Part shown: piece after piece, positions 6,622 through 64,000 of the stretch
How positions within the stretch are numbered: the first letter of the stretch is position 1
How the letters are laid out: the number at the start of each line of letters is the position of its first letter
Virus record (IMG/VR): IMGVR_UViG_3300027782_000027
Span: 1 to 64,000 of that record
Strand: one strand, 5' to 3'
DNA length: 64,000 nt
Position numbers and translations under genes: made by a program
The notes under the pieces: generated by a model
What the model was told of the DNA's origin: nothing
Seen by the model: only the letters and a program-made list of their open reading frames with translations
Database searches by the model: none

Positions 6622-6633
6622 TATATATAAATA

Positions 6634-7002: not shown

Positions 7003-7109
7003 TATATATAAATACAAAGATACACATAAAACTGAACAATACATATTGGGTTAATAATTTAATAAGAATAAGATAATATGGTTTGAGGTCGTTTTTAATA
7101 CTTATTATT

Positions 7110-8816: not shown

Positions 8817-8832
8817 TATATATAAATATTAG

Positions 8833-9168
8833 TTAGAAGGGTAACCTCAATGTCAAACTTCCACTGTTTGTAATGGACATTGATTTTTCGTAACTGTATT
8901 TTACTTGTAATGTATCACCAATCCATCGAACAATAATCTTCTCAGAATCAGAATCACTCAAAGAAAATAATGATGAAATATCGTCAACTAATTCATAATT
9001 CATAAAAGAAAAATTATCACTCATATCGTATCTGATTTGACAATACTTATCACCTTCTGAATTAACAAAGTATATAGTGTCTTTATCCTCAACCTGAATA
9101 AAATCTTGATTGTCAAGATACCTAAAGATTACTTTTTCTAATTTAGATTCTGTGATAAGATATTTCAT
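8833..9168 (-). CDS. MKYLITE-family small protein
   Basis: paralog family motif. Confidence 0.8.
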   Translation of the reverse strand: MKYLITESKLEKVIFRYLDNQDFIQVEDKDTIYFVNSEGDKYCQIRYDMSDNFSFMNYELVDDISSLFSLSDSDSEKIIVRWIGDTLQVKYSYEKSMSITNSGSLTLRLPF

Positions 9169-9200
9169 ATGATAATAAATATAATTATATTTATAATATT

Positions 9201-9656
9201 ATGAACCTACAACAAAACATAAAAAGAATATTAAGGGAAGAATACACCGTAAAACAGATGAAGTTATTAACTATCGCAAGTCAGGTGGGGTTACTAAAGA
9301 CAGGAGAAATGTTCGGTGGTATAGAATACCTTATAAATGTGTTAGGTGATGAGTTCCTTACAACAAACAATAAGGTTAAGATTATTAGGGAAGTAGTAGA
9401 AACAACCGATTATGAATATATCACACTAATGGATATGAATGAAAACCCAATAGTTCTCAAGGTTGGAGACGGTAAACTTTCACAAATAGAAATGATAAAT
9501 AAAGAAGATGTTACAGTGTTCCATTATGGTGGATATGAATACTCACAAGATTTAGGTGAAAGTTATATATCTTATGAAGAACTACCAAAAGATGTATTAG
9601 ATGATATCTTTAATATGGTATTAGATTTCTATACAGATACTTTAGAGAATAAGTAA
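9201..9656 (+). CDS. MNLQQNIKRILREE-leader protein
   Basis: shared leader. Confidence 0.8.
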   Translation: MNLQQNIKRILREEYTVKQMKLLTIASQVGLLKTGEMFGGIEYLINVLGDEFLTTNNKVKIIREVVETTDYEYITLMDMNENPIVLKVGDGKLSQIEMINKEDVTVFHYGGYEYSQDLGESYISYEELPKDVLDDIFNMVLDFYTDTLENK

Positions 9657-10385
9657 TTATTGATTTAAGACCTGTTCCATCACATAATTCATTACAGACA
9701 TTTCTACATCCGTTGTACATACCTTATTATTTAATACCTCTTCCACTCCTCTTGTGAAAGGTCCAGAATATGCTTCCATTGTAGATACCTTATGATTTAA
9801 TACCTCTTCTACCTCAATTCTTCCAACGTAATCAAGTGAATCGGTTGTGGATACCTTATGATTTAAGACCTCTTCCACCAATGAATGTTCGGGGTATTTG
9901 AGAATGGTAGTTGTAGACACCTTAACATTATGACTTAATACATCTTCCACCTTCCAAGGAACACGAACTTTAACATCGCACGTTGTGGATACCTTATGAT
10001 TTAATACATCTTCCACCATCATGCTTTCAACACCGCTACCTGTCACGGTTGTGGATACCTTATGATTTAAGACCTCTTCCACCACGTAGTTCCTAAGCCC
10101 TATAGGGCGATATGTTGCGGATACCTTATGATTTAAGACCTCTTCCACCCAAGAAGATAGAACAGGACAAAAATCATCCGAACTCATGGAGAATATTTGA
10201 AAAAACGAATTAAAAAAATCGTATCTCCACCATAAAGTACCTGACTCATCAAGTTCAAAGTACCAATGTTTATTATCCCTATTAATGAACCATATAGACC
10301 CATTATAAGGAATAATCTCACAATCACCTAACTCTCTATATAGGTGTTTAAAAATAATTTGTTTTAATCTATCTGTAATAACCAT
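9657..10385 (-). CDS. repeat-array protein 4 (7 unique cassettes)
   Basis: paralog of 435-1235; TATATTTG element just upstream of the ATG. Confidence 0.85.
   Translation of the reverse strand: MVITDRLKQIIFKHLYRELGDCEIIPYNGSIWFINRDNKHWYFELDESGTLWWRYDFFNSFFQIFSMSSDDFCPVLSSWVEEVLNHKVSATYRPIGLRNYVVEEVLNHKVSTTVTGSGVESMMVEDVLNHKVSTTCDVKVRVPWKVEDVLSHNVKVSTTTILKYPEHSLVEEVLNHKVSTTDSLDYVGRIEVEEVLNHKVSTMEAYSGPFTRGVEEVLNNKVCTTDVEMSVMNYVMEQVLNQ
9712..10149. CRISPR. CRISPR-like array 4, in frame; 7 repeats (one with a 6-nt insertion) plus a degenerate one ending at 9681
   Basis: Repeats at 9712, 9778, 9844, 9910 (42 nt), 9982, 10048, 10114; all spacers 30 nt. Confidence 0.55.
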
Positions 10386-20894: not shown

Positions 20895-21677
20895 ATGAGA
20901 AACATAGAACAATATAGAAAAAGATTTTTTAATTTAATGGAATCAACCATTGGTGATGTTAAACCATTGATTAATGAAATTTTCGAGACGGATACAAATG
21001 GAACTTTAAACTATCCTGATGGTACATACACCGGAGACTATCATGCTAAACCTTTCAATCAACCTGTACGACGTGGTTATGGAATTATGAAATGGAATAA
21101 TGGTAATATATACACCGGTAATTGGGGTAATAATACGATGGATGGTTATGGAACTTTTATATATGCTAATGGTCAAAAATATATAGGGGATTTTAAAGAA
21201 GGGACTTTCAGTGGTTATGGAAGTATGACATGGCCTGATGGTCAAAAATATGTGGGATATTTCGAAAATGATTATGCCAATGGTTATGGTTCTTATACAG
21301 AAAAAAACGGAACTATTTACAAGGGAATGTGGAAAGACTTTGAGTTAGTAAATCCTGACATTGTTGAAAGTGAAGTATCGAGTACTGAATGTAATACTTT
21401 AAAGGCGGAAGCCGATAAACAAACATTATATAATCCGACTAATCTTAGTTCAGGTAAATTATCTATTGGTTTAAAAAATCAAGGACCTCTTGTAAAATAT
21501 GTTCAGTGTTTATTAAATGGAAAAAACAAAGAATTAAGTCTTGGTCTAACTGACCTTACAGTTGATGGTATTTTTGGAAATAATACAAAGAAAATGGTTA
21601 GAAAATTTCAAGAAAAGACTGGAGGATTAGGTAATGATGGTGTCGTTGGTAAAAATACATTTTTGAAATTGGTTTAA
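20895..21677 (+). CDS. MORN-repeat protein with C-terminal peptidoglycan-binding domain
   Basis: Y.G.(F/W)....(D/N)GYG repeats; VKYVQ.LL...VDGIFG..T...V..FQ...DGVVG..T (PG_binding_1-like). Confidence 0.85.
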   Translation: MRNIEQYRKRFFNLMESTIGDVKPLINEIFETDTNGTLNYPDGTYTGDYHAKPFNQPVRRGYGIMKWNNGNIYTGNWGNNTMDGYGTFIYANGQKYIGDFKEGTFSGYGSMTWPDGQKYVGYFENDYANGYGSYTEKNGTIYKGMWKDFELVNPDIVESEVSSTECNTLKAEADKQTLYNPTNLSSGKLSIGLKNQGPLVKYVQCLLNGKNKELSLGLTDLTVDGIFGNNTKKMVRKFQEKTGGLGNDGVVGKNTFLKLV

Positions 21678-26291: not shown

Positions 26292-26324
26292 AAAAAAGGA
26301 GGGATAGTTAAATCCCTCCTTTTT
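26292..26324. terminator. bidirectional intrinsic terminator
   Basis: AAAAAAGGAGGGAT...ATCCCTCCTTTTT between convergent genes. Confidence 0.8.
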
Positions 26325-26524
26325 TATTTGATAACATTTTTTGTTGAACGGTAAATAGTAATCATCACACTTGGAACAACCAAGAAAATAAGAGTTAGTT
26401 TATTTAACGCTGAGATTAAATTTACAGTATTAATGAATTGAACTGGACATCCCGTACCTAAGAAGTTAACTAACAATGTAGAGATGATGAAGAGGGTTAC
26501 GATTACGAAGGTGAATTTTTTCAT
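26324..26524 (-). CDS. small two-TM membrane protein
   Basis: hydrophobic; TATATTTG upstream. Confidence 0.65.
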   Translation of the reverse strand: MKKFTFVIVTLFIISTLLVNFLGTGCPVQFINTVNLISALNKLTLIFLVVPSVMITIYRSTKNVIK

Positions 26525-26655: not shown

Positions 26656-27081
26656 TTAGTTTACTGACACAACTTCTAAATCAAAGATAAGTTTCTTACC
26701 TGCTAATGGATGGTTCATATCCAATACCGCAGTACTTTCTTTAACTTCTGTAACTACAACGTTTACAGGACCAAATTGGTTTTGTCCTTGTAACATATCC
26801 CCAGCTTTAACACCTTCAGGGACTTGAGATAGTGGTACTTCACTCATCATTTGAGGTTTAATATCTCCGTAAGCATTTTCTGGCTCAATTTCAATTGTTT
26901 TCATTTCGCCTGCGGTCATATCAATTAATCCGTTTTCAAAACCTGGAATTAATTGACCTTGACCTAATGTTACTGTAAGAGGTTCTCTACCCTCAGCTAA
27001 AGATGTGTCGAATACTGAACCATCTTCTAATTTACCTGTATAATGAACAGATACATTATCACCGTTTTTAATTTTTGTCAT
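26656..27081 (-). CDS. FKBP-type peptidyl-prolyl isomerase (SlyD/FkpB-like)
   Basis: VSVHYTGKLEDGSVFD, LIPGFE, PENAYG, DMNHPLAGKKLIF. Confidence 0.93.
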   Translation of the reverse strand: MTKIKNGDNVSVHYTGKLEDGSVFDTSLAEGREPLTVTLGQGQLIPGFENGLIDMTAGEMKTIEIEPENAYGDIKPQMMSEVPLSQVPEGVKAGDMLQGQNQFGPVNVVVTEVKESTAVLDMNHPLAGKKLIFDLEVVSVN

Positions 27082-27688: not shown

Positions 27689-27853
27689 ATGAAAAACTTA
27701 AAACTAAAATTGACTTCAGCAATGTTCGCTCTTGTATTATCAGTTGTATTAATGGTAAACTCACCATCATTACCTGTATTCGTTTTAAGTGTTGGTCTTA
27801 TTGTATTACAGACGGTTTTGTGGGGTAAGTTGATGAAAGAGATTAAAGAATAA
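27689..27853 (+). CDS. 54-aa two-TM protein (not in the ORF track)
   Basis: MKNLKLKLTSAMFALVLSVVLMV...; TATATTTG upstream. Confidence 0.6.
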   Translation: MKNLKLKLTSAMFALVLSVVLMVNSPSLPVFVLSVGLIVLQTVLWGKLMKEIKE

Positions 27854-27885: not shown

Positions 27886-28710
27886 TTATACTGTTACTTC
27901 TTGTTGTAGTAGTTCGTAAGCTCTTGATAAACGAGTCATTCCTATTCCACCACCAAATCGTGGGAAGAAATCGTGTGATAAAAACTCTTCCAATTCTTTT
28001 TCTACTCTTTCTTTTCCGAATAATTCAAAAAGTTTTTCAGAGTATTTTCCATTTTCTATTGTGTAGAAGTTATTTCTCATTTCTTCTACGTTAGAACTTC
28101 TTTCAGCAGAACCGATAGTCTCTTGTCCGTAAAGAATTACATCAACTTTGTTGAATATTTTGTTTTTACCTTCTCTCATGTTCCAAAAAGGATTTGTTCT
28201 GTAAGGAAAGTTTTGTAGAGACACTACTGGTCCTTTTTCTTCCCACATTTTTGTCTCGTGTTCGTTCTCTAAAATGGATACTCCACCATATTCTTCACAA
28301 ACATCGTCGTAGTTAACTTCTACCTCACTATCAAATCCAAGATAGTCTAAAAGTTCTGATTCAAGTTTTAACATTTCTTTCATTCCACCTTTTGATTCAA
28401 ACTCAAACATTGGAAAAATCATTTCATGACGACCTGGGATTGGGTCTTTTTCTTGTCTATACGACGTTGAAATACAATATACACCATTCCATTCAGGATT
28501 TTTAAGAAGTTCGTATTCTAACCACATTTGACCTGTCTGTGGTAGTGGCCACACTTCTCCTTGATAATTAAATGTTGTTATTGAGTGTGGATTTTCACAC
28601 GCTGCCAAGATTGACAATCTTGATTGGGTTGGAACTTCTTTAAAACCTTTGTTTTGGAAGAATGTTCTCATTTTTTGAACTAACTCGTTGTAAGTTTCTG
28701 TGTTTTTCAT
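27886..28710 (-). CDS. class IIb aminoacyl-tRNA synthetase-like catalytic domain without anticodon domain (AsnRS-like; possible archaeal-type asparagine synthetase)
   Basis: motif 1 FFQNKGFKEVPT, motif 2 SYRQE...RH..IF.MFEFE, motif 3 FGGGIGMTRL; only 274 aa. Confidence 0.8.
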   Translation of the reverse strand: MKNTETYNELVQKMRTFFQNKGFKEVPTQSRLSILAACENPHSITTFNYQGEVWPLPQTGQMWLEYELLKNPEWNGVYCISTSYRQEKDPIPGRHEMIFPMFEFESKGGMKEMLKLESELLDYLGFDSEVEVNYDDVCEEYGGVSILENEHETKMWEEKGPVVSLQNFPYRTNPFWNMREGKNKIFNKVDVILYGQETIGSAERSSNVEEMRNNFYTIENGKYSEKLFELFGKERVEKELEEFLSHDFFPRFGGGIGMTRLSRAYELLQQEVTV

Positions 28711-28745: not shown

Positions 28746-28834
28746 AAAAAAAATCCTGACAAATGTCAGGATTTCTTAAAAATATTATTGTTATTTAAAT
28801 TTCGTAATTTTCTTTTAACTTTTTTTGTAGTCAT
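28746..28834 (-). promoter_or_regulatory. putative Asn-rich leader peptide with terminator (attenuator)
   Basis: uORF 28834-28766 MTTKKVKRKLRNLNNNNIFKKS; hairpin AAATCCTGAC-ATTT-GTCAGGATTT plus U tract. Confidence 0.55.
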
Positions 28835-28907
28835 TAAAATTAAATATATGCGTTTTATTAAAAATAATCAAGATTAACAAAATATTTATTAAAAAGTATT
28901 TATCAGT

Positions 28908-30695
28908 ATGAGGAATTTATTGACTGAAGTTAGTAAGATGAAAAACATGATGGGTTTACAAGAGGCAGATAAGCCAAAATATAACCCTGAAGTAAAATAT
29001 CTTGTTTCAGTTTTAAAAGATAATAAAGTGTATAGTGCTCAAATCCAAAAATTCATTAATAGGATTAATGAATTTTCAAAAGACGGTTTAGTTGATTTTG
29101 GATTAATTACCCGAGGTATTTTAAAAACTTTAAAGTTAAAAGGTAACAAAGATATTAATGTTTTTGAATTTTTCAAACAACTAACTAAATCATTAGAAAA
29201 AAGAAAAAATAAAAAAGAAGTTGTTAATCCTGAAGAAGAACCATCAATTTTAGATAAAGACATTTATAAAAAAGAAATATTTTTTCTACAGGTTGAACTT
29301 TTAAAGTTACAGGAATGGTTAAAACAAACAGGTAAAACTGTTATAATTGTTTTTGAAGGAAGAGACTCGGCAGGTAAAGGTTCTACAATTAAGAAATTCA
29401 CTGAAAATTTAAATCCAAGATATTATAAAGTTATTGCTCTTGGTATCCCAACACCTGATGAAAGAAAGAACTGGTGGGATAGATACAGTAATCAAATTGA
29501 AAAAGGTAAGATAAACTTCTTTGATAGAAGTTGGTACAATAGAGGATTAGTTGAACCTGTAATGGGTTATGGTTCATCAGAAGAGTACGAAGACTTTATG
29601 GATAATGTTCAGGATTTTGAAGAATCATTGGTTGTTGATGGGGATTACTTATTTAAACTTTGGTTCTCAATAGATAAAGAAACTCAAGCTAAGAGATTTG
29701 ATTTCAGACAGAAGTCACCATTGAAATATTGGAAGTATTCTGAGAATGATGAGAAGATGCAAGATGTGTGGGAAAAGTTTACAGAGTATAAACAAAAACT
29801 TTTTGATAAAACATCAACCGTAAACCATCCGTGGGTTATTTTGGACGCTAACGATAAAAAGATTTCAGGTTTAAACTCAATTAGATACGTTTTACAAAAT
29901 ATTCCTTATACAAATAAGGATGAGGATGTTTTAAACAAAGACTTCCCTGAAGCGATGACGGTTTTAAAACCAAATATTAATGAGCAATCAGTTTTTGATT
30001 TCTATAACCAATTAACGGGTAAATCACAACAAAAACAAGAACCAAATTTTATGGATACATGGTCATCTATGGGACAACCAAAAGACCAAATGACACCAAA
30101 TTCAGGAGGTGCTGTTGATGCAGTTAAAGCTGGTGCTAAAAAAATTGCAAAAATTGCAAAAGAAAAGTCATCAAATTCAAATACAGTTGGGGTCGGAACA
30201 GTTTCAGATAAACTTGTAAATTTTGTAGCGAATATTGAGTTTTTTGTTAAGTGTGTTTATGACGACGCTAAAGGTGGTAAATGTGTGAGAAAAGAACCTG
30301 ATTGTTGTTTAAGAGGAAAATCCCCAACTCCCGGAGCAAAGGCAACAATAGGTTATGGTACAACGTATTATCCTGGTGGAATACCTGTTAAACCTAATGA
30401 CCCTGACATTACTGAAACAAGAGCAAAAGAATTAATGAGAAATACATTAAACAAAAATGCAAAAAAAATACTTAATTTATACCCAAACTTAAATCAACAA
30501 CAATTAGATGCGATGGCTTCATTATGTTACCAAATGGGACCTGATGGTTGTACAACAGAAGCTCCAAATTTATCAGCAGCCTTAAAAAGTAATCCAAATA
30601 ATTTACAAAATGTTGGACAACATTTTGTTGATTTCCCATTCAAAGACAGAAGAGAAAAAGAGTGGAAAATTTATAGTCAAGGAATTTATTCTTAA
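28908..30695 (+). CDS. ppk2: polyphosphate kinase 2 fused to a C-terminal GH24 lysozyme-like domain
   Basis: FEGRDSAGKG and FDRSWYNR (PPK2); E...VYDD, TIGYG, LNQQQLDAMASL.Y..G, RR.KE (phage lysozyme). Confidence 0.85.
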   Translation: MRNLLTEVSKMKNMMGLQEADKPKYNPEVKYLVSVLKDNKVYSAQIQKFINRINEFSKDGLVDFGLITRGILKTLKLKGNKDINVFEFFKQLTKSLEKRKNKKEVVNPEEEPSILDKDIYKKEIFFLQVELLKLQEWLKQTGKTVIIVFEGRDSAGKGSTIKKFTENLNPRYYKVIALGIPTPDERKNWWDRYSNQIEKGKINFFDRSWYNRGLVEPVMGYGSSEEYEDFMDNVQDFEESLVVDGDYLFKLWFSIDKETQAKRFDFRQKSPLKYWKYSENDEKMQDVWEKFTEYKQKLFDKTSTVNHPWVILDANDKKISGLNSIRYVLQNIPYTNKDEDVLNKDFPEAMTVLKPNINEQSVFDFYNQLTGKSQQKQEPNFMDTWSSMGQPKDQMTPNSGGAVDAVKAGAKKIAKIAKEKSSNSNTVGVGTVSDKLVNFVANIEFFVKCVYDDAKGGKCVRKEPDCCLRGKSPTPGAKATIGYGTTYYPGGIPVKPNDPDITETRAKELMRNTLNKNAKKILNLYPNLNQQQLDAMASLCYQMGPDGCTTEAPNLSAALKSNPNNLQNVGQHFVDFPFKDRREKEWKIYSQGIYS

Positions 30696-30713
30696 CCCTT
30701 ATATTTATAGAAT

Positions 30714-35421: not shown

Positions 35422-36246
35422 ATGGCAAAAATAGTTAGACTAACTGAAAATGATTTAGTTAAAATAATCAAAAAAGTTCTATCTGAACAAGAGACTCAAC
35501 CAACAACTCAACCTACTGGAACAACTCAAACTACGACACAAACTACAACTCAAAGTCCTGATTTATCTAATTTAGGTATAAAAACACTTAATGGTGGTGT
35601 TAAAGTCGTTGAGGTTCCTCAAAAACAAAGTCGTAATATAGAAGAAATTGCCAAACAAACTGGTGATAAAGTTTATGGTGTGGGTAAATATGAGATAATG
35701 AGTGACGTGGGTGGAAATTATCCAGGAATGCTTGTAGTTAAAAAAGAGGCGTATCAAAAATTATTATCAGACAAAGGTATTACTGTTGTGGAAGGGGAAC
35801 ATTGTTCTGAACCAAAATGGACAGGTAAAAAAGATAAAAATAATCCTACCGGTTGGGTATACACATTTAAGGCAGGTAATGATTCTTCTAATTACGTTGT
35901 TAAACCATTACCATGGAATTTATTTAATAAAATACTTAATGAAAGAGGAACACCAGGATGTCCTGACGATAGAGTGAATAGGCACATTCATCCTAAAGTT
36001 AAAGGGGATTATTCAGGAGGTAATTTTATGGACTCTGATTACAGTCAAGCCTCAAAGAATTTCTTTGATAACCCGAATTCAAATCAAGCTATGAATGCTT
36101 TTTGTAGTGGTTTAAAGCCTACAAGTTTTTATCGTATAAATGGTTTTCCAGGTGTATCGGCAAAATGTCCTGTATTTGTTGATGGTAACGAAGATATGGA
36201 ACGGGCATTTTCTACAAATGATTATATAAGGATTCAAACTATCTAA
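35422..36246 (+). CDS. MAKIVRLTENDL-leader protein with T/Q-rich linker
   Basis: shared leader. Confidence 0.8.
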   Translation: MAKIVRLTENDLVKIIKKVLSEQETQPTTQPTGTTQTTTQTTTQSPDLSNLGIKTLNGGVKVVEVPQKQSRNIEEIAKQTGDKVYGVGKYEIMSDVGGNYPGMLVVKKEAYQKLLSDKGITVVEGEHCSEPKWTGKKDKNNPTGWVYTFKAGNDSSNYVVKPLPWNLFNKILNERGTPGCPDDRVNRHIHPKVKGDYSGGNFMDSDYSQASKNFFDNPNSNQAMNAFCSGLKPTSFYRINGFPGVSAKCPVFVDGNEDMERAFSTNDYIRIQTI

Positions 36247-41037: not shown

Positions 41038-42873
41038 ATGGATAGTAAACAAGAATTATTAGAAAGAGTGTTGTTGATGATGAAATATGACTCATCAAGA
41101 ACTTTAAATGAAAATGTTCAAATTATAAATGAACAGTCAGATGCAAATTGGAAAACCAAATATGCGTGTGTTCCCAAACACTATGGTGCTACAAAGGATA
41201 CTTTAAAAGATGGCTCTACCGCATATAAAATTAATGGACTTTATTATTACAACAACGGAAGAGCTCAACCGTCACGAACATATTCATGTAATGACGCTTT
41301 TTTCAAATATCCTAAAAATCAAGTCGATGGAGATGCGTTTAGAAAATGGTTTTATAAGAATTATAGTAATGACAAATATTTAGGTAACATTGCAAAAAAA
41401 TATAAAGTTTCACAAACAGGTCCTTACAATTCACCTGAATTAAGAAATGCTTGGGAATCGTATGGGTGGGAATTTTTAGAAGGTGGAGGGAAATTAACAC
41501 CAGATGAAGTAATTGCTAAACGAAAAGAAATAGAAAATTCTGATATTGATGGTTATATGAGAAAGGTATGGGGAACAAGTTTTTCTATGCCTAACGCTAA
41601 ATCTAAACAAGAATGGATTAATGGTTATGCTAAGTACGCGGCTAAAGAAATTGAAGGAGCTATTTACATGGTGTGGGGTACTAATCCTGATGGTAAATGT
41701 TCTAGAAAAGATAAATCATTTTTGGATGATAAACCAATCGGTTTAAAATGGCCTTCATTATGGGAAAGATTAAATAAAAAAGGAAGTTACAATGACGGAG
41801 GTAGTACGGTTAACGAATATAATACATGTTATAATGAAGATGTTGCAATGGGATTAAAAGATGCTTACAAACCTTCTTGGGACCATGTCGTTAAAGCTTA
41901 CGGTATCAATACTACAGTATCTGTTGAAAAGATTGTTGATAAATTATGGAAAACATATACGGATGGTCATGGAAGTATTTCAAACGTACCGTCATATAGT
42001 AATCGTAGAATTTATAGAAATACGGGTTCTGTTTCAAAATCGGGTGGTATAACAATGGAAGAATTCCATGAAATTATGATGTATTTAGAAATAGGTTCAG
42101 CGTTTATACCTGGTATCGGCCCTATATTATCTTTCGGATTTGGTTTTGGTGACGCATTATTTTATATGGATGAAAATCCGGAAATGGGGGCCTTTGTTTT
42201 ACTTTTAACTGTATTACCTGAATTAAAATTGTTTACTAATACTGTAAAATTAGGTAAAGCAACAGGTGTTTATGCCACTACCTTAAATAAACTCGCCAAA
42301 GGTGATGTTAAAGCGTTAACGAAACAAGAGATTGCGTTTGTTAATGAAGTTAAGACATTAGTTGAAACAAATAAAGGTGAGGTTAAATCTGAAGTTAAAA
42401 AGGTTGTAGGTAAAGAAGCTGATAAAATTTTAAATAATCCAAGTGCGAAAAAACAATTAAAACAGGAAGAGATTAAAGCTTTAAACACAGTATCTGCTGC
42501 GAAAAATTTAGAATTTTTAAAATTAGATACTTTATTTGGTATTGCTTTACCATTTACAACAAAATATGGTAGAGATATATTAAAACGAATTTTTGGATTA
42601 TATGAAGAAAATTTTGGAGGAATGACGGAAGCTCAATGGGTTGATTTAGAAAGAAAACTTAATAAAGTTCCTAAAGAAGTAATGCCTCCAACTGTTACCG
42701 CTTTTGAAAACAAACCTGAGGAGTTTGTAGCGTATGTAAAAGAAGAAAAAGTTTCTAAAGCAATTAATTCAAGATTACAAAACTTAACACTAAAAGTACC
42801 ATTAAACCAATTAGAGACTAAAACAACTGAAGAAGATATTGCTGTTATGATGGCACAAGAACCAAACAAATAA
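41038..42873 (+). CDS. large putative virion-internal protein with hydrophobic hairpin
   Basis: leader ending INEQ; AFIPGIG.....FG..DA..Y segment. Confidence 0.65.
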   Translation: MDSKQELLERVLLMMKYDSSRTLNENVQIINEQSDANWKTKYACVPKHYGATKDTLKDGSTAYKINGLYYYNNGRAQPSRTYSCNDAFFKYPKNQVDGDAFRKWFYKNYSNDKYLGNIAKKYKVSQTGPYNSPELRNAWESYGWEFLEGGGKLTPDEVIAKRKEIENSDIDGYMRKVWGTSFSMPNAKSKQEWINGYAKYAAKEIEGAIYMVWGTNPDGKCSRKDKSFLDDKPIGLKWPSLWERLNKKGSYNDGGSTVNEYNTCYNEDVAMGLKDAYKPSWDHVVKAYGINTTVSVEKIVDKLWKTYTDGHGSISNVPSYSNRRIYRNTGSVSKSGGITMEEFHEIMMYLEIGSAFIPGIGPILSFGFGFGDALFYMDENPEMGAFVLLLTVLPELKLFTNTVKLGKATGVYATTLNKLAKGDVKALTKQEIAFVNEVKTLVETNKGEVKSEVKKVVGKEADKILNNPSAKKQLKQEEIKALNTVSAAKNLEFLKLDTLFGIALPFTTKYGRDILKRIFGLYEENFGGMTEAQWVDLERKLNKVPKEVMPPTVTAFENKPEEFVAYVKEEKVSKAINSRLQNLTLKVPLNQLETKTTEEDIAVMMAQEPNK

Positions 42874-42913: not shown

Positions 42914-44422
42914 ATGAAATCAGAAATTTTACTTGAAATAAATAGAGTTAAAGAGATTATGGGGTTATCCCCATCATTACTCAACGAGCAACTTGCGTTT
43001 TTAAAATCAATTGCAAAATCAGGAAAGGCAGAATTAAAGGCAGAATTAAAAAATTATTTAGATACATATGCAAAGGCTATGAATGTAAGTACGGACACCG
43101 CTCTTGAAGCATTTGAAAAAGACTATGCTGAGGCTTTGTTAAAAAATGACGATAATGTAGTTAATAAAGTATTTGATGATTATTTTAGTATTGTTTCTAA
43201 AGATTATGCGGATGATTTAATTGAGATGTATGCGAGAGTTTCACCTATAGAATTTGGTAAAGAGGTAGTCGGTGCTCAGTTAGGAGTTCAATATAAAGGA
43301 GTGTATGCTAAATATATTAAACCAGAAACTAAACTTACCGACGAAACTTTTAACAGTGTTAGAAATATGTTATACGATGTTAAATCTAAAAAATTAAATA
43401 TTGTTGGAGATAGTTCTGCGGACATATTAGCAAGAGAGTCTCTTGCAGAATTTGAAGAAGCTCTTGAAAAGAAATTTACTGATTATAACGATGAGTATAT
43501 TAAAAGGGAAGAAAAAAGAGAAGCTGAGGAAATACTAAAACAACAAGAAAAGGAACTGGCAACAAGAAGTTTAGATGACTGGTATGATGATGTTTATACG
43601 GTTGATACTAAAAATGCAAGTAAAAAGCCATTAACAAGAGAAGAATTCAAAGCTCAGGTAAAATCAGCTCAAGCTAAAGTCGCTGGTGCAAAACCAGTAG
43701 ACATTGTAAAAGAGTTAATTGAAAGTGCTCCGAATAAGAAAAATGCGGTTGAATACATTAATAATGCGTTTAGAAAAAAAGGAGGTGTTGGAGATGTTGT
43801 TGACATGGCGGCAGATGGTAGTATAAAGACAACTAATAAATTGGTTGAATTTACAAAATCACTTGGAGCATTGGGTTGGGGAGGGTTATTAGTTATAGGT
43901 ATTGCGGTTGCGGTTTTTGCACCAAGTGTTATTGAGTCTATTTACCAAAAATATAAAGAAATGAGCACTAAGTATAATGATGTTTATGATGCTCTTGGGG
44001 AAAGATTATCTGGAAATTATTATGATTTACCTGATGATGTTAAATTTTTTATTAGTCGGGAATTCACAATTGAACAAGCTAAAAAAAATGACACTACACC
44101 ATATATTAAAAATATAGAATATAAAGAAAATACGGACTCTGAGGCAGGTTCAATAACAATTAAAATGAGTGATGACTCTATTGTAAAATATGAAACCTCT
44201 GATGGTAAAACATTTAATAAAGTTGGTGGTGAAGGTGAAGTTGAAAGCGGAAAAAAAACTGAAGAGGAATTTAAAGCCGCCGCTATAAAAGGAGGTTTTG
44301 ATATTGGAAAATCATTTGTTAAACAAACAGACACAAAATATTGGGGGGTTGATAACGATGATACAGAAAGTACTACTGAATGGAACGGGACAACGTTTAT
44401 TGTAACGGCAGGACACATTTAA
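42914..44422 (+). CDS. large helical putative virion-internal protein with one TM segment
   Basis: leader LLEINRVKEIMGL...LNEQ; TM GALGWGGLLVIGIAVAVFA. Confidence 0.65.
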   Translation: MKSEILLEINRVKEIMGLSPSLLNEQLAFLKSIAKSGKAELKAELKNYLDTYAKAMNVSTDTALEAFEKDYAEALLKNDDNVVNKVFDDYFSIVSKDYADDLIEMYARVSPIEFGKEVVGAQLGVQYKGVYAKYIKPETKLTDETFNSVRNMLYDVKSKKLNIVGDSSADILARESLAEFEEALEKKFTDYNDEYIKREEKREAEEILKQQEKELATRSLDDWYDDVYTVDTKNASKKPLTREEFKAQVKSAQAKVAGAKPVDIVKELIESAPNKKNAVEYINNAFRKKGGVGDVVDMAADGSIKTTNKLVEFTKSLGALGWGGLLVIGIAVAVFAPSVIESIYQKYKEMSTKYNDVYDALGERLSGNYYDLPDDVKFFISREFTIEQAKKNDTTPYIKNIEYKENTDSEAGSITIKMSDDSIVKYETSDGKTFNKVGGEGEVESGKKTEEEFKAAAIKGGFDIGKSFVKQTDTKYWGVDNDDTESTTEWNGTTFIVTAGHI

Positions 44423-47204: not shown

Positions 47205-47278
47205 GCCTTCGTAGCTCAGTAGGATAGAGCAACAGATTTCTAATCTGTGGGCCAGGGGTTCGAATCCCTTCGGGGGTA
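47205..47278 (+). tRNA. tRNA-Arg (anticodon TCT)
   Basis: GCCTTCG acceptor, TAGCTCAG..GGATAGAGC D arm, ACAGA-TTTCTAA-TCTGT anticodon arm, GGTTCGAATCC T arm; CCA not encoded; promoter and terminator flank it. Confidence 0.93.
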
Positions 47279-47284
47279 CTATTT

Positions 47285-48772: not shown

Positions 48773-50434
48773 ATGAATAAAAAACAATTACACGAACAAT
48801 CGTTAAAGGAACTACGTAAGTTAGAATATATCTTTGAGGAGGAATCAACTGCAAGACCTGTTGCAACAAGTGTTAAAAGTCACTTGGAAGGTTTAGGATA
48901 CGAAACTAAAAGAACAATGGCGGAAGTTGGTGATTTAACTCCTGAATTTGGGGACACCTTAAAAGATGTCGGAAGTGCATTTAAACAAAAATTACCTGAT
49001 TTAAAAATAAAGTTTGGTTCAGGTAGAGATTTATTTCATAAAGCATATCCAAATAGTAGACACAATAAAGGTAATGCTATTGATGTTGTATTCAAAGGAA
49101 TTGAAAAAGGTGATGATGATGAATTAAATAAAATCTCAACTTTACTATGTGCGTTAAGAAAAAAATACCCCGGATTTACATTTATTGATGAGTATAGAAG
49201 ACCAAGTAGATTCTCAACAGGAGTTCATTATCATTTATCATATTCAGATAGTAAAACAGATGAAGGTGGTGGAACCTCTCAATTTTGTTCGTCCCTAAAA
49301 AACTTAGATAATTTAGAAGATATTGATTTTGAAAAAATTGATAACCTACAAACAACAGAAACAACAAAAGACCCTAGTAAATTAGAGAAGTTCTTAGATT
49401 ATATTGGATTAGGAAGTTTAACTGATATTAAATCAGGTGATAAAGAAAGTCAAAAAGAATTGGTATCAAAGGTTCAAGATAAAGAAGATGTTAAAGATAC
49501 TGATGACGGATTTGAAATCTTTGGATATAATGTTGACGATATAATAAATAAAATTGATGACATTTTACCTCAATTTGAGTCGGAACAAAAGAGAAAGAAT
49601 ATTTTAGAAACTCTTGCAATTAGAGATATTTCAGGAATGTCAACTTACGGAAGGAAAAATGAAAAACTTAAATCAAGAGATTTTTTTGTTATCCACCATA
49701 CCGCAGGTAGAGGTGATGCTGAAAAAGTTGTTGGTATTCTTAACAGTAGAAAAGGTGGATTAGGAGTTCAGTGGGTTATAGAAAGAGATGGGTCAATTGT
49801 TAGAACATTACCAAGTGGAAGTAGAGGCGCACACACTTTAAATTCAAGTGATTTCCCATCGGCACCACAAGGAATTAATAATTCTAACGCTGAAGGTGTT
49901 GAAGTTATTGGTATGAATGATGAGGACATTTTACCAGTACAAGCGGTTTCAGCACTTAAATTAGTTAAATCTTTGGGGTATAGTCCTGATAGTATTTACG
50001 GTCATGGTGAAATAAATCCGGGGCATAAAGCAAAAACTGAGGGTCAAACAATCAAACAATTCATTTTAAAAAATTGGGGTAATAGTGAATCTGATTATGA
50101 TTATTCTATGTTTGAAAATAGGGGAATTGATGTTGAGGCGGAAACAAAGAATATTAAAGAACCAAGTAAATTGGATTCATTTTTAGATGCCGTTGGATTA
50201 GGAAGTCTGACAGGGGCTAAAGCTGGTGATAAAGAAAGTCAAAAAGAATTAGTTTCAAAGGTTGAGAATGAAAAAGACGTTAAAGATACTGGCGATGGAT
50301 TTGAAATTTTTGGATATAAAGTTGACGATATATTAGATAAAATTGGTGATTTATTACCTCAATTTGAATCAGAACAAGAAAAAAAGAATCTTTTAGAAGA
50401 TATTGAAAGAATTAAATCAAAAATGATTAAATAA
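48773..50434 (+). CDS. two-domain cell-wall hydrolase: M15-like peptidase plus Amidase_2
   Basis: SRH..GNAID...HYHLS; VIHHTAG...GAH...GVEVIG...YGHGEI. Confidence 0.8.
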   Translation: MNKKQLHEQSLKELRKLEYIFEEESTARPVATSVKSHLEGLGYETKRTMAEVGDLTPEFGDTLKDVGSAFKQKLPDLKIKFGSGRDLFHKAYPNSRHNKGNAIDVVFKGIEKGDDDELNKISTLLCALRKKYPGFTFIDEYRRPSRFSTGVHYHLSYSDSKTDEGGGTSQFCSSLKNLDNLEDIDFEKIDNLQTTETTKDPSKLEKFLDYIGLGSLTDIKSGDKESQKELVSKVQDKEDVKDTDDGFEIFGYNVDDIINKIDDILPQFESEQKRKNILETLAIRDISGMSTYGRKNEKLKSRDFFVIHHTAGRGDAEKVVGILNSRKGGLGVQWVIERDGSIVRTLPSGSRGAHTLNSSDFPSAPQGINNSNAEGVEVIGMNDEDILPVQAVSALKLVKSLGYSPDSIYGHGEINPGHKAKTEGQTIKQFILKNWGNSESDYDYSMFENRGIDVEAETKNIKEPSKLDSFLDAVGLGSLTGAKAGDKESQKELVSKVENEKDVKDTGDGFEIFGYKVDDILDKIGDLLPQFESEQEKKNLLEDIERIKSKMIK

Positions 50435-50463: not shown

Positions 50464-50856
50464 TGGTGGAGGTGCTGGGTTTCGAACCCAGGTCCAAAAA
50501 TGTTTACGATAAAACACTACACGTTTAGGTCATTGTTTTTCTAAACAATCCGAAACTTCACAATTCCCTTATTTTATAGTGGTTCGGTTTACTGAGAACT
50601 AATCCTCCACTTTGTTCCTTTTCGGATAGAAACCACACCACGGTACGAGCTTCTGTTTCAAGGCGTATGCTTACCGGCCCATTGTATACTAATCTTAGAT
50701 TAGGCTACAGATACTTCTTCAGTACGGATTAAACCGAGTGTAGAAAGTTTTGCAATTGTGTTGCCGTTTGTTTTTTAAACCAGTTTTACAGGGTTAGTTT
50801 AGCCCCGACGTGCGTTTTATAATAAATTCATTCCTGTCAAATCCAGAAACACCCCC
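50464..50856 (-). ncRNA. ssrA: tmRNA
   Basis: 5' GGGGGTGTTTCTGGATTTGACAGG; 3' CTGGGTTCGAAACCCAGCACCTCCACCA; tag ORF 50765-50700; TATCTTTG promoter upstream. Confidence 0.92.
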
Positions 50857-60091: not shown

Positions 60092-61837
60092 ATGAGTTTA
60101 TCTAAAGAAGCCGTTTTAATGGAGTATGCCAAGTGTATGAAATCAACACCATACGCCCTTAAAACTTATTTACAGACATATGACAACACTGTTTCAAAGT
60201 ATGTCCCATTAGAGTTATTCCCTGACCAAATTAGTCTGGTTGAAGATTATGAAAACTATAATGAAAATATTGCACTAAAGTATAGACAAGCTGGTGTATC
60301 TACGGTAACCGCTGCTTGGTCATCAAAAAAACTTGTTTTTGCTAAAAAGAATAGTCCTGAAAAGGTTTTGATTATAGCAAATAAGTTGGATACTGCGGTG
60401 GAGGTGGCGAATAAGATTAGAGGATTCACCGACCAATGGCCTAGTTGGGTTGGTGTTGGGTTTTCTGCTGAAAAAAATTCACAAAGACATTTTAAATTAA
60501 CTAACGGATGTGAAGTTAAGGCAGTTGCGACATCTAAGGATGCTCTTCGTGGTTATACACCCACAATATTAATATTTGACGAGGCTGCGTATATTGAAGC
60601 TGATGGGGATTTTTGGGCGGCTTGTATGGCATCCTTATCTACAGGTGGTAAAGTAATAGTTGTATCAACACCAAACGGATATGACGCAATCTATTATGAA
60701 ATTTACGACCAAGCATTAAAGGGAATGAATGAATTCAAAGTTTCCGAAATGGTTTGGTGGAAAGACCCAAGATATGCGAAAGATTTATCATTAGTTAATG
60801 TTAAAGATATTATTCATTATTATTTAAATCGTAATGAATACCCGAATGTTGAAATTATTGAATATAATAATAAAGAAAAGAACTTTGATGAGATAAGACA
60901 ACTGATTTCACAGGGTTATAAGCCAAACTCATCTTGGTATGAGTCAATGGTAAAGAAACTTAAATACGATAAACGTAAAGTTAACCAGGAGTTGGAATGT
61001 GCGTTTCTTGGTTCAGGGGATAACGTATTTAATTCTGATATGTTGGAAGATTTAAGGGTAAATATGGTTAAGGAACCACCTACGAAGATGATGGGTGGTG
61101 GACTATGGATTTGGAAAGAACCTGAAATAGGTAAAAAATATATCATGGGAGTTGACGTATCTCGTGGTGACAGTGAAGACTTTTCAACATTTCAAATTGT
61201 TGATTTTGATACAAGAGAACAGGTTGCTGAGTATGTTGGTAAACTTCCTCCTGACACTTTGGCTGAAATATGTTATAAGTGGGGTAATATGTATAATGCG
61301 TTCATTGTTGTGGATATTACTGGTGGTATGGGTGTTACAACATCTTTAAGATTAAGGGAACTTGGATATAGGAATGTGTATGTTGATGGAGTTGATGTGT
61401 CAAACAAATGGCAATACGACCCAAAGGCAACTGAAAAAATACCAGGAATTAACTTTAATGCTAAAAGAGTTCAAATTATAGCAACTTTTGAAGAATATCT
61501 AAGACATGGATTTAGAATAAATTCAAGTAGGTTGTTAAATGAAATGAATACATTTATTTACATGAATGGAAGACCTGACCACCAAAAGGGACAACATGAT
61601 GACTTGATTATGTCTGTTGCGATGGCACTTTATGTTGGTGAAACATCATTTTCATCACTTAACAAGGTGACAAATCAAACAAAGGCGATGATTGACTCGT
61701 GGACTGTTAACACTAATGAATTTAATAGAAGACAATTTATGGACCCGGTAATTTCACAACAACAAGAAAACTTTAAACGAGAGGCAACAAAAAGTGACTA
61801 CGAAAACTATTTATGGTTATTCGGTGGTAAACGATAA
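60092..61837 (+). CDS. terL: terminase large subunit (T4 gp17-like)
   Basis: KYRQAGVST Walker A variant, ILIFDEAAY Walker B, STPNG, QELEC.FLG, GVDVSRG, HDDLIM. Confidence 0.93.
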
Positions 61838-63191: not shown

Positions 63192-64000
63192 ATGAGTGAA
63201 AATAAACTAACGGTATGGCAACGGTTATCCCAAACATTTGGACCCAATTCTCTTTTGGGGCAGGATTATCCTACGTACAAATATGATAAAAGTGAATTAT
63301 TAAAAACAACCTCTAAGTCTGAATATGATAGAGAAAAACTTCAGGCACAACAAACATATTATTTAGCTAACCAATGGGGTAGAATTGAAAATAATCTATA
63401 TACACAGGCGGTTTATTATGAACCAACTCGTTTATCATCTTTCTACGACTATGAGTCAATGGAATTTACCCCTGAAATTGGTGCCGCTCTTGACATATAC
63501 GCTGAAGAATCTACAACCATTGACCAAAATGGTTTTATGTTACAAATTTATTCTGAATCATCGAGAATTAAATCAATTCTTGGAGATTTGTTTAATAATG
63601 CTTTAGATATTAACACTAACTTACCTATGTGGATAAGAAACACATGTAAGTATGGTGATAATTTTGTATATCTTAAATTAGACCCTGAAAAAGGTATTAT
63701 AGGATGTATGCAATTACCAATCATTGAGATTGAACGATTGGAAGCGGGTATGGGAGCACACTCAACAGACTCAACAACTAATCCTGAAAAGAAACATTTG
63801 AAGTTCAAATGGAAACAAAAGGATTTAGAGTTTAATACTTGGGAAATTGCTCACTTTAGATTACTTGGTGATGATAGAAGACTTCCTTATGGAACTTCTA
63901 TGTTAGAAAAGGCTCGTCGTATTTGGAAACAATTATTGTTATCTGAAGATGCTATGTTAATCTACAGAACATCAAGAGCACCTGAAAGACGTGTATTTAA
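63192..64000 (+). CDS. portal protein (T4 gp20-like), truncated by the window end; not in the ORF track
   Basis: MSENKLTVWQRL...ESMEFTPEIGAALDIYAEES...HFRL...PYGTSMLEKARRIWKQLLLSEDAMLIYRTSRAPERRVF. Confidence 0.92.
   Translation, partial: MSENKLTVWQRLSQTFGPNSLLGQDYPTYKYDKSELLKTTSKSEYDREKLQAQQTYYLANQWGRIENNLYTQAVYYEPTRLSSFYDYESMEFTPEIGAALDIYAEESTTIDQNGFMLQIYSESSRIKSILGDLFNNALDINTNLPMWIRNTCKYGDNFVYLKLDPEKGIIGCMQLPIIEIERLEAGMGAHSTDSTTNPEKKHLKFKWKQKDLEFNTWEIAHFRLLGDDRRLPYGTSMLEKARRIWKQLLLSEDAMLIYRTSRAPERRVF

What the first reader, a model, noticed from the sequence alone, without database searches (positions are those of the whole stretch)
28908..30695. PPK2-lysozyme fusion with a virion-type leader
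Seen: leader MRNLLTEVSKMKNMMGLQE, a full PPK2 domain, a linker containing INEQ, then a GH24-like domain, all in one frame. Inference: a packaged polyprotein cleaved at (I/L)xE sites into a polyphosphate-driven NTP regenerator and an entry muramidase.
Basis: partly seen in the sequence, partly recalled or inferred. Interest (0 to 1): 0.6.

Follow-up and report, generated by a model that had tools for sequence, protein, structure and literature searches.

The report
Leader-tagged PPK2–lysozyme fusion in T4-like phage
A freshwater T4-like jumbo phage encodes one real 595-residue protein that joins a polyphosphate kinase to a lysozyme behind a short leader, and several indirect lines suggest, without proving, that the phage's head protease cuts it into two enzymes that travel inside the capsid.

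Summary
Window 28908-30695(+) is one uninterrupted ORF: leader (1-19), four-helix N-domain (27-101), complete class-I-like PPK2 (115-355), INEQ (357-360), a disordered ~67-residue linker, and a GH24 lysozyme fold (427-595) with an invariant catalytic Glu.

The fusion is not an assembly error. Contigs from independent studies bridge the junction, and more than 45 protein clusters share the architecture.

New findings:
- Near-identical PPK2 cores carry swapped C-terminal wall-hydrolase modules, with at least 30 changes on the tree.
- Standalone PPK2s stop just before INEQ.
- Some relatives are leader + KPNINEQ + lysozyme, with PPK2 exactly missing.
- The genome has a T4-type head module with a gp21-family protease.
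- T4 gp23's known cleavage site aligns with I-N-E|A in this capsid protein, the same tripeptide as at the junction.
- Both candidate sites lie in flexible segments.
- Similar leaders head about 30 other genes and resemble T4 propeptides.

Best reading (about 0.5): a cargo polyprotein tagged with a capsid-targeting sequence. Packaging, cleavage and an entry role are not shown. The main rival (about 0.3) is an unprocessed PPK2-endolysin in a lysis cassette, because two small double-TM ORFs lie nearby.

The parts
28908..30695 (+). Whole gene: 595-aa precursor (68.5 kDa) made of leader, N-domain, PPK2, junction, linker and GH24
28883..28890 (+). Promoter-like word TATTTATT, 17 nt upstream of the ATG. 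It is a general phage promoter motif, not a marker of late genes.
28908..28964 (+). Leader, residues 1-19 (MRNLLTEVSKMKNMMGLQE): a low-confidence helix at 2-14, then a flexible stretch. Candidate protease sites are L5-T6-E7 and L17-Q18-E19|A20.
28986..29210 (+). Four-helix N-domain, residues 27-101 (pLDDT 80-91). It has no Pfam or PHROG match, is conserved in all leader-bearing phage PPK2s, and is absent from bacterial and other phage PPK2s.
29250..29972 (+). PPK2 domain, residues 115-355. The P-loop GRDSAGKG (151-158), DRSWYNRG (206-213) and the lid KRFxxRxxxPxKxWKYSxxD (262-281) are invariant in the family.
29973..29987 (+). Junction N356-I357-N358-E359|Q360, in a flexible segment. Every fused relative has it and every standalone PPK2 lacks it. 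It is the same I-N-E as the inferred capsid-protein maturation site.
29988..30185 (+). Disordered linker, residues 361-426 (pLDDT below 50), with the conserved motif EPNFMDTWSSM (378-388) and a basic stretch KKIAKIAKEK (411-420). Close relatives that carry different hydrolase modules share this linker.
30186..30692 (+). GH24 lysozyme fold, residues 427-595. Catalytic Glu444 and T480-x-G-x-G are invariant. A four-Cys insertion loop spans 449-467.
27689..27853 (+). 54-aa ORF with two predicted TM helices, a holin-like candidate. In relative L026 its counterpart lies immediately upstream of the leader-lysozyme gene.
26324..26524 (-). 66-aa ORF with two predicted TM helices, the only other small double-TM ORF in the 240-kb record
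42914..44422 (+). 502-aa protein of unknown function with the same leader type (MKSEILLEINRVKEIMGLSPSLLNE|Q)
41038..42873 (+). 611-aa protein of unknown function with a related leader that ends IINE|Q
20895..21677 (+). Leader-bearing protein (…VKPLINE|I) with MORN repeats and a PG_binding_1 domain, a second wall-directed cargo
60092..61837 (+). T4-type large terminase, the start of the T4-like morphogenesis block. The gp21-family protease lies at genome 66499-67218 and the gp23-family capsid protein at 68978-70867, both beyond the window.
63192..64000 (+). Portal protein gene of the T4 gp20 family, which runs off the window end

Best explanation
The gene encodes a precursor built like a T4 internal-protein precursor.

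Proposed mechanism:
1. A 19-residue N-terminal leader acts as a capsid-targeting sequence and brings the precursor into the scaffolding core of the prohead.
2. The phage's gp21-family prohead protease, which cuts after Glu in (L/I)-x-E, removes the leader at L17-Q18-E19|A20, and possibly also cuts at L5-T6-E7.
3. The protease also cuts the polyprotein at I357-N358-E359|Q360.
4. This releases a ~40-kDa N-domain+PPK2 and a ~26-kDa linker+GH24 lysozyme, which stay in the head and leave with the DNA at infection.
5. The class-I-type PPK2 would then use host polyphosphate to turn NDPs into NTPs at the very start of infection, and the lysozyme would act on the wall.

Shown: the domains, the fold, the reality of the fusion, the module boundaries, the swapping of modules, the T4-type head module, and the homology-inferred I-N-E|A site in the capsid protein.

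Inferred: targeting, cleavage, packaging, ejection, and both physiological roles.
For: 1. Protease. A gp21-family protease is present: Peptidase_S77 at E 1.9e-26, 33% identity to T4 gp21 with the ELNHP and SSRG motifs conserved, and a hit to PDB 5jbl at E 8.5e-18. It sits in the T4 gene order portal-x-x-protease-scaffold-capsid. gp21 cleaves after L/I-X-E, and N-terminal propeptides of 7-19 residues target IPs and Alt into the core (PMC9026906).
2. Capsid site. T4 gp23 L63-T64-E65|A66 aligns exactly with I58-N59-E60|A61 of this capsid protein. That is the same tripeptide as at the junction.
3. Accessibility. Of ten [LIV]xE sites in the protein, only E19 and E359 fall in low-pLDDT segments between folded units.
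4. Module boundary. All ~70 fused relatives continue LKP-x-[IV]-[NGE]-E-[QS], and all 42 standalone PPK2s stop 0-6 residues after LKP.
5. Portable leader. P0122, P0123, P0124 and P0127 are leader + KPNINEQ + linker + GH24 at the same syntenic locus, so cleavage at INE|Q would give the same mature lysozyme N-terminus with or without PPK2. P0129 puts the same GH24 behind a different leader class.
6. Leader conservation. The leader helix is conserved across PPK2s that are only ~60% identical. It is followed by a φ-x-E in 76 of 86 distinct N-termini, against 44 expected, with P1' mostly Ala or Ser.
7. Other leader genes. About 30 other genes carry related leaders (MKYLITE|S, MKKVVRLTE|S…VIxE|Q). 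They are conserved as peptides, not as DNA, and match the style of T4 propeptides read from NC_000866: MKTYQEFIAE|A, MELITE, MAKINELLRE|S. φφxE is about 2.5-fold enriched in the first 30 residues of this phage's ORFs.
8. Cargo swapping. Cargo diversity behind a conserved tag parallels the T-even IP loci (PMC3012670). At least 30 module changes occur on the tree, and seven sets of identical PPK2 cores carry different modules.
Against: - There is no virion proteome, N-terminal sequence or expression timing. The shared promoter-like motif also precedes the replicative helicase, so it does not mark late genes.
- (L/I/V)xE is a three-residue motif in Glu- and Ile-rich proteins. The enrichment statistics are inflated by paralogy and shared ancestry.
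- The leader has no sequence homology to T4 CTSs. It is only the same style.
- The protease-leader complex prediction gave no verdict.
- This is the only GH24 in the record, and the only two small double-TM ORFs lie within 2.6 kb of it. One is directly upstream of the lysozyme gene in a relative. That looks like a lysis cassette.
- A contractile-tail phage normally carries its entry lysin on the baseplate, and proteins ejected through the tube would not obviously meet the wall.
- PPK2 works perfectly well as an ordinary expressed auxiliary gene.
Confidence: 0.5

Rival explanations
1. It is an unprocessed cytoplasmic bifunctional protein. The GH24 part is the phage's endolysin within a lysis cassette, released through a holin at the end of infection, and it happens to be fused to an auxiliary PPK2 that boosts NTP supply during replication. 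The leader is a conserved N-terminal helix with some other role, or none.
For: - It is the only GH24 match in the 240-kb record.
- The only two small double-TM ORFs of the record (26324-26524 and 27689-27853) lie within 2.6 kb of it. In relative L026 the 54-aa one is 75 nt upstream of the leader-lysozyme gene.
- Swapping of catalytic modules is typical of endolysins.
- The best fold matches are endolysins.
- Phage PPK2s are usually listed as auxiliary metabolic genes.
Against: - It does not explain why every fusion keeps (I/V)xE(Q/S) exactly at the module boundary.
- It does not explain why the lysozyme keeps the non-hydrophobic leader when PPK2 is lost, or acquires another leader class.
- It does not explain why about 30 unrelated genes share such leaders.
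- It does not explain why an endolysin would carry a ~67-residue disordered linker with a conserved motif.
- The 54-aa ORF has no significant holin family match.
- A separate 553-aa Amidase_2 protein could serve as the endolysin.
Confidence: 0.3
2. It is a virion-associated lysin mounted on the tail or baseplate, not inside the head. PPK2 serves as a carrier or oligomerisation module, and the leader is an assembly tag.
For: - Relatives carry PF18013 'Phage tail lysozyme' and SleB-like Hydrolase_2 modules in the same position.
- No lysozyme domain was recognised in any hub or baseplate candidate.
- Rapid module exchange fits adaptation to host walls.
Against: - The gene lies 30 kb from the morphogenesis block, among leader-bearing small genes.
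- The leader style and the I-N-E site match head-protease substrates.
- The standalone leader-PPK2 forms have no lysin at all.
- The hub and baseplate proteins are simply unrecognised by the profiles, so the absence of a tail lysin is not established.
Confidence: 0.08
3. The fusion is an artefact: an assembly chimera, or two adjacent genes read as one.
For: None was found. The record is a metagenomic contig.
Against: - Zero-difference contigs from two other studies, and a diverged strain, span the junction.
- More than 45 clusters from JGI, ENA, NCBI and Logan keep one frame across it.
- A syntenic 298.6-kb contig encodes the same 590-aa fusion.
- The standalone PPK2 in L007 has no hydrolase gene next to it.
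Confidence: 0.01

Closest known systems
T4 internal proteins IPI/IPII/IPIII and Alt (capsid-targeting sequence cargo processed by gp21)
   Same: - Both have a T4-type head module with a gp21-family protease.
- Both have a short N-terminal propeptide ending in (L/I)-x-E, here 19 residues against 7-19 in T4.
- In both, diverse and rapidly exchanged cargo sits behind a conserved tag.
- Alt is an enzyme that is packaged, cut at both ends and injected (PMC9026906, PMC3012670).
   Different: - There is no sequence homology between this leader and the T4 CTS.
- The cargo (PPK2, wall hydrolases) is not known for T4.
- An internal site would split a two-enzyme polyprotein, which is not described for T4 IPs.
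- About 30 tagged genes compare with a handful in T4.
- Nothing here has been shown experimentally.
Class I polyphosphate kinase 2 (Francisella FtPPK2 4yeg/5ll0, SMc02148 3czq, PA3455 C-domain 3czp)
   Same: The PPK2 domain is full length, with E 1e-58 to 1e-71 to solved enzymes. The best NCBIfam hit is TIGR03707, and the P-loop, DRSWY and lid motifs are intact.
   Different: - It scores below the TIGR03707 equivalog cut-off (268 against 302 bits).
- It carries a phage-specific leader and a four-helix N-domain.
- It has a C-terminal hydrolase module.
- Its substrate preference is untested.
GH24 phage lysozymes (T4 e, P22 gp19, Acinetobacter phage endolysins 6et6/8app/9kbs)
   Same: The fold matches with TM-scores up to 0.80 and rmsd 2.5 Å. 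The catalytic Glu and the T-x-G-x-G motif are invariant.
   Different: - Sequence identity is only 13-28%.
- The Pfam match covers only profile positions 14-83 of 125.
- There is a four-Cys insertion loop.
- A long disordered linker precedes the domain.
- It is never seen without a leader in this phage group.
Ejection and inner-body proteins of giant phages (phiKZ, 201phi2-1, SPN3US) cut by gp21-like proteases
   Same: These are also large-genome myoviruses with many paralogous head-internal proteins, each carrying a propeptide removed after Glu by a diverged gp21 homologue (PMC9026906; PMC5694885, listed).
   Different: - Their motif is S/A/G-x-E, not L/I-x-E.
- The phage lineage and capsid protein family differ.
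- No PPK2 or lysozyme cargo is described in the papers read.

Membership tests
PPK2 (Pfam PF03976; class I, NDP-phosphorylating) | Full-length match to the PPK2 profile above the curated cut-off | tested here: met
   237.6 bits against a cut-off of 22.3, profile positions 2-227/229
PPK2 (Pfam PF03976; class I, NDP-phosphorylating) | Walker A P-loop, Walker B-like DRSWY motif and basic lid motif intact | tested here: met
   GRDSAGKG 151-158, FDRSWYNRG 205-213 and KRFDFRQKSPLKYWKYSEND 262-281 are invariant in 45 aligned relatives
PPK2 (Pfam PF03976; class I, NDP-phosphorylating) | Equivalog-level match to the class I model, or measured polyP:NDP phosphotransferase activity | tested here: inconclusive
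   TIGR03707 is the best model at 268.2 bits, below its 301.8-bit cut-off. Activity cannot be tested here.
GH24 lysozyme (Pfam PF00959) | Profile match above the cut-off | tested here: met
   42.2 bits against 22.3, but only profile positions 14-83/125; 44.6 bits in the genome scan
GH24 lysozyme (Pfam PF00959) | T4-lysozyme-type fold | tested here: met
   The model has pLDDT above 90 for residues 427-595. Foldseek gives probability 1.00 to GH24 endolysins, P22 lysozyme and T4 lysozyme, TMt 0.63-0.80.
GH24 lysozyme (Pfam PF00959) | Catalytic Glu at the end of helix 1, and Thr/Asp partners | tested here: met
   E444 and T480-I-G-Y-G are invariant across 40 sequences of three GH24 subtypes, and D452/D453 are present. 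Muramidase activity was not tested.
T4-type CTS cargo (internal head proteins processed by gp21) | The genome encodes a gp21-family prohead protease in a T4-type head module | tested here: met
T4-type CTS cargo (internal head proteins processed by gp21) | An N-terminal propeptide of about 7-19 residues ending in (L/I)-x-E at an accessible position | tested here: met
   L17-Q18-E19|A20 lies in a flexible segment. The feature is conserved in 76 of 86 relatives' N-termini. It is a low-information motif.
T4-type CTS cargo (internal head proteins processed by gp21) | The leader is sufficient to target a protein into the prohead core | not testable with these tools
   This needs a leader-reporter fusion and purified particles.
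T4-type CTS cargo (internal head proteins processed by gp21) | The protein is present in mature virions in processed form | not testable with these tools
   No cultured isolate or virion proteome exists, and the literature searches found none.
Endolysin of a holin-endolysin lysis cassette | A recognisable holin gene adjacent to the lysin | tested here: inconclusive
   A 54-aa double-TM ORF lies 1 kb upstream, and is adjacent in L026. It has no significant family match (phrog_10606, E 0.036).

The most novel reading that the evidence does not exclude
A widespread group of freshwater T4-like jumbo phages, probably of Bacteroidota, uses a family of short N-terminal capsid-targeting leaders to load its heads with an exchangeable arsenal of about 30 cargo proteins.

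One of these is a polyprotein that the head protease splits into two enzymes:
- an injected polyphosphate-driven NTP-regenerating kinase, which would be the first metabolic enzyme known to be delivered with phage DNA to energise a starved host;
- a swappable wall hydrolase.
Probability: 0.3. Interest if true: 0.8.

Novelty: new variant of a known kind. Interest (0 to 1): 0.62.

Why it matters
If the leader really is a capsid-targeting tag, three things follow.
- **Generality of the T4 system.** The T4 'expression-packaging-processing' principle would be shown to be general. In these phages it would be expanded into a large cargo system that can be read from sequence alone: leader, (L/I)xE, cargo.
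- **A new strategy.** A packaged PPK2 would mean the phage brings an enzyme that converts the host's polyphosphate store into NTPs before any phage gene is expressed. That is relevant to infection of starved cells in lakes and to phosphorus cycling.
- **Practical use.** The leaders and the I-N-E junction would be candidate tags and cleavable linkers for loading proteins into capsids of phages that infect Bacteroidota.

Even under the rival reading, the frequent exchange of four or more hydrolase types on an almost invariant PPK2 is an unusually clear natural example of cassette shuffling at a defined linker.

Tried and rejected
- **Complex prediction.** The prohead protease with residues 1-45 returned 'no answer' (score 0.00, controls not run). 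It is no evidence either way.
- **Promoter-like word TATTTAT[AT].** I tested it as a possible late-gene marker linking the gene to head genes. I rejected this because it also precedes the DnaB-like helicase, so it is a general promoter.
- **Hub, baseplate and head-core candidates.** Profile scans of ten ORFs at 65-79 kb recognised only the protease. I could not establish whether the tail has its own lysin.
- **Other large or leader-bearing proteins.** Scans of 41038, 42914, 44432 and the RLTESDL family found nothing, apart from MORN + PG_binding_1 in ORF 20895.
- **The unidentified C-terminal module of P0054/P0055/P0041.** It has no Pfam hit, and the Atlas look-alikes are unnamed viral proteins. 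The 0.78-0.79 scores to PF18013 and Glucosaminidase clusters are only leads.
- **Literature.** Searches for a packaged PPK2 or a PPK2-lysin fusion found nothing relevant. The library is open-access only.
- **DNA search against deposited phages.** The structural region gave one trivial TerL hit, so no close cultured relative exists.
- **Big representative-protein search.** I did not use it, because the word search had already answered the fusion question.
Full report
**1. The observation**

Window 28908-30695 (+) is a single uninterrupted ORF of 595 codons that starts MRNLLTEVSKMKNMMGLQE.
- Pfam finds a complete PPK2 domain at residues 115-338 (E 1.7e-70, profile 2-227/229). It also finds a partial but above-threshold Phage_lysozyme match at 475-548 (E 1.3e-10).
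- PHROGs (endolysin phrog_7) and NCBIfam (TIGR03707 PPK2 as the best model, below its equivalog cut-off) agree.
- INEQ is residues 357-360.

**2. Is the C-terminal part a lysozyme, and is the junction real?**

An AlphaFold2 model of residues 356-595, built on 40 homologues, gives a disordered stretch at 356-426 (pLDDT below 50) and a confident domain at 427-595 (pLDDT above 90). Foldseek against the PDB returns GH24 phage endolysins, P22 lysozyme and T4 lysozyme at probability 1.00, with TM-scores normalised to the target of up to 0.80. Catalytic Glu444 and the T480-x-G-x-G motif are invariant across three GH24 subtypes.

The junction at nt ~29973-29990 is bridged without a single difference by contigs from two other studies (X2 28800-30115, X3 29470-30584). 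A diverged strain (X6) bridges it as well. The word-indexed protein search finds the same PPK2 + Phage_lysozyme architecture in more than 45 clusters at 47-94% identity, from JGI, ENA, NCBI and Logan. One of these sits on a syntenic 298.6-kb contig.

**3. The genome**

The window is the first 64 kb of a 240,759-bp IMG/VR virus record that is about 82% complete and about 30% G+C. It occurs in freshwater and lake metagenomes from 17 studies.

Just downstream lies a T4-type morphogenesis block:
- TerL at 60092-61837;
- the portal (gp20 family) from 63192;
- a Peptidase_S77/gp21-family prohead protease at genome 66499-67218;
- an acidic scaffold-like protein;
- a gp23-family capsid protein at 68978-70867.

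The gene order matches T4's 20-67-68-21-22-23. The protease is 33% identical to T4 gp21, keeps the ELNHP and SSRG motifs, and hits PDB 5jbl. The nearest cultured capsid proteins (about 42% identity) are from Flavobacterium phage 'immuto', Microcystis phage Mel-JY01 and Rhodothermus phage RM378. This is therefore a distant T4-like jumbo phage, probably of a Bacteroidota host. The host assignment is an inference from signal-peptide style and from a promoter word that resembles TAnnTTTG.

**4. Anatomy of the family**

Comparison of 129 relatives shows a strict modular grammar.
- *(a) Leader.* A leader helix, M-[RK]-[NK]-L-L-[ST]-E-[VI]-x-[KR]-x-[KR]-x-[ILM]-[ML]-G, is conserved even between PPK2s that are only ~60% identical. 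A spacer of variable length follows and ends in φ-x-E. This holds for 76 of 86 distinct N-termini against 44 expected from shuffles, and P1' is mostly Ala or Ser.
- *(b) N-domain.* A phage-specific four-helix N-domain (27-101) is absent from bacterial PPK2s and from PPK2s of unrelated phages, whose matches begin at residue ~113.
- *(c) PPK2 core.* All catalytic motifs are invariant.
- *(d) Standalone forms.* All 42 standalone forms stop 0-6 residues after …FPEAMTVLKP.
- *(e) Fused forms.* All ~70 fused forms continue x-[IV]-[NGE]-E-[QS], and then a linker and a module.
- *(f) Module types.* The module may be one of three GH24 subtypes, PF18013 'phage tail lysozyme', PF07486 SleB-like Hydrolase_2, or one of two unidentified domains.

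On a tree of 114 PPK2 cores the module label changes at least 30 times, and seven sets of identical cores carry different modules. For example, P0002 carries GH24 and P0038 carries PF18013. The cassette is exchanged often and recently, downstream of a shared linker motif (EPNFMDxWSSM).

Some relatives (P0122, P0123, P0124, P0127) are leader + KPNINEQ + linker + GH24, with PPK2 exactly missing. They sit at the same syntenic locus. P0129 has the same GH24 behind a different leader class. So three states exist: leader-PPK2, leader-PPK2-hydrolase and leader-hydrolase.

**5. Evidence that bears on cleavage**

According to the T4 literature, gp21 cuts after Glu in the short motif L/I-X-E. Virion proteins lose N-terminal propeptides of 7 residues (Alt) to 65 residues (gp23). 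The 10-19-residue IP propeptides are capsid-targeting sequences. Alt, an injected enzyme, is cut at both ends. The CTS is regarded as a way for T4-like phages to load varied proteins into heads (PMC9026906; PMC3012670).

Four results here connect to that.
- Aligning this capsid protein with T4 gp23, read from NC_000866, puts T4's L63-T64-E65|A66 exactly on I58-N59-E60|A61, and the Glu-Ala pair is invariant. The inferred maturation site of this phage's own capsid is therefore I-N-E|, the same tripeptide as I357-N358-E359|Q360 at the PPK2/lysozyme boundary.
- The protein has ten [LIV]xE sites, and only E19 and E359 lie in low-confidence segments between folded units.
- Cleavage at INE|Q would give the same mature lysozyme N-terminus whether or not the precursor contains PPK2.
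- The predicted products are a 2.3-kDa leader, a 40.3-kDa N-domain+PPK2 and a 26.0-kDa linker+GH24.

**6. The leader is one of a family**

About 30 ORFs, nearly all in the first 40 kb, begin with related leaders:
- MKYLITESQL, 16 genes;
- MKKIVRLTESDLxxIVKRVIxE(Q/E), 10 genes;
- M(N/D)LxxxIKxxLREE, 3 genes;
- MRN/MKS…(L/I)xEQ types on ORFs 18669, 20895, 41038 and 42914, and on the PPK2-lysozyme itself.

In the RLTESDL family the conservation is at the peptide level. There are 143 synonymous against 170 non-synonymous codon-pair differences, and the upstream DNA is only 42% identical. φφxE is about 2.5-fold enriched in the first 30 residues of this phage's ORFs (52 against 20 expected), although paralogy inflates the figure. 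One tagged protein carries MORN repeats and a peptidoglycan-binding domain. T4 propeptides read from the T4 record have the same style: MKTYQEFIAE|A, MELITE…, MAKINELLRE|S, MLKEQLIAE|A and MNEPQLLIE|T. The N-terminal L-I-E of T4 gp21 also aligns with L17-I18-E19 of this protease.

**7. What counts against the packaging model**

- Nothing shows packaging or cleavage. No isolate, proteome or expression timing is available. The complex prediction gave no verdict.
- The motif carries little information.
- The promoter-like word shared with TerL and the portal gene also precedes the helicase gene, so it does not date expression.
- The fusion holds the only GH24 in the record.
- The only two small double-TM ORFs in 240 kb (26324-26524 and 27689-27853) lie within 2.6 kb of it. 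In relative L026 the 54-aa one is immediately upstream of the leader-lysozyme gene, which is the look of a holin-endolysin pair. The ORF has no significant family match, however.
- A separate 553-aa Amidase_2 protein (48773-50434) could be either the endolysin or a structural lysin.
- For a contractile-tail phage, it is not obvious how a lysin coming out of the head would reach the wall.

**8. Verdict**

A leader-tagged polyprotein processed by a T4-type protease is the explanation that accounts for the most features: the boundary motif, the portable leaders, the flexible sites, the I-N-E capsid site and the large leader family. I put it at about 0.5. An unprocessed PPK2-endolysin in a lysis cassette is at about 0.3, a tail-mounted lysin at about 0.08, and an artefact at about 0.01.

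The role of the PPK2 (polyP + NDP → NTP) follows from class I similarity and is untested. An 'entry' role for the lysozyme is not established.

I found no description of a PPK2-wall-hydrolase fusion or of a packaged PPK2 in the literature library. I rate the finding a new variant of known kinds: CTS cargo, phage PPK2 and modular lysins.

Noticed in passing
window 50464-50856 (-) and 47205-47279 (+): The phage encodes a tmRNA (Rfam RF00023, 130.5 bits; tag peptide AKLSTLGLIRTEEVSVA by ARAGORN) and a tRNA-Arg(TCT).
   Followed up: partly
window 435-10385 and 14242-38506: Multigene families are defined by conserved N-termini and confined to the first ~40 kb: MKYLITESQL (16 genes), MKKIVRLTESDL…VIxEQ (10), M(N/D)LxxxIKxxLREE (3) and MKVTDRLKQVVFKQLYKELG (4). 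Most of the cargo has no recognisable family.
   Followed up: partly
whole genome; e.g. window 28883-28890, and upstream of 60092 and 63192: The oriented promoter-like word TATTTAT[AT] lies within 60 nt upstream of 72 of 281 ORFs, against about 5 expected. It precedes structural, leader-bearing and replication genes alike. It resembles the Bacteroidota -7 element TAnnTTTG, and its reverse complement is the T4 late-promoter word TATAAATA.
   Followed up: partly
window 28898-30700: One low-depth contig (depth 3.2) in run X4 skips the whole PPK2-lysozyme gene and has 33 other bases in its place. This suggests a presence/absence polymorphism in the phage population.
   Followed up: no
window 26324-26524 (-) and 27689-27853 (+): These are the only two small ORFs with two predicted TM helices in the 240-kb record. 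Both lie close to the only GH24 gene and are candidate holins. Neither has a significant family match.
   Followed up: partly
window 27886-28710 (-) and 26656-27081 (-): A class-II aminoacyl-tRNA-synthetase-like (tRNA-synt_2 / AsnA-like) 274-aa protein (phrog_29758, E 2e-96) and an FKBP-type peptidyl-prolyl isomerase lie directly upstream. The aaRS-like gene is missing in the relative that also lacks the PPK2 module (L026).
   Followed up: no
window 48773-50434 (+): A 553-aa protein has an Amidase_2 domain at residues 303-417 and ~290 unassigned N-terminal residues. It is a second wall hydrolase, either an endolysin or a structural lysin.
   Followed up: no
window 52874-54937 (-): A full-length ClpB/ClpC-like double-AAA+ ATPase (phrog_4871, E 2e-237) is encoded by the phage.
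   Followed up: no
window 30252-30308 (residues 449-467): The GH24 subtype fused here has an inserted loop with four conserved cysteines (C-x11-C-x6-CC). Two other subtypes lack it. It could form disulfides or bind a metal.
   Followed up: no
window 61842-63122 (+) and 35422-36246 (+): The protein between TerL and the portal has long Thr/Pro-rich tandem repeats ([12 protein letters not shown]…). A leader-bearing 274-aa protein has a TTQ-rich low-complexity stretch.
   Followed up: no
relatives P0041, P0054, P0055 (residues ~430-585) and P0081, P0089, P0096 (residues 372-478): Two further C-terminal modules fused to the same PPK2 have no Pfam match. One has a conserved RNNNPGNLDY motif. Whether they are wall hydrolases is unknown.
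   Followed up: partly
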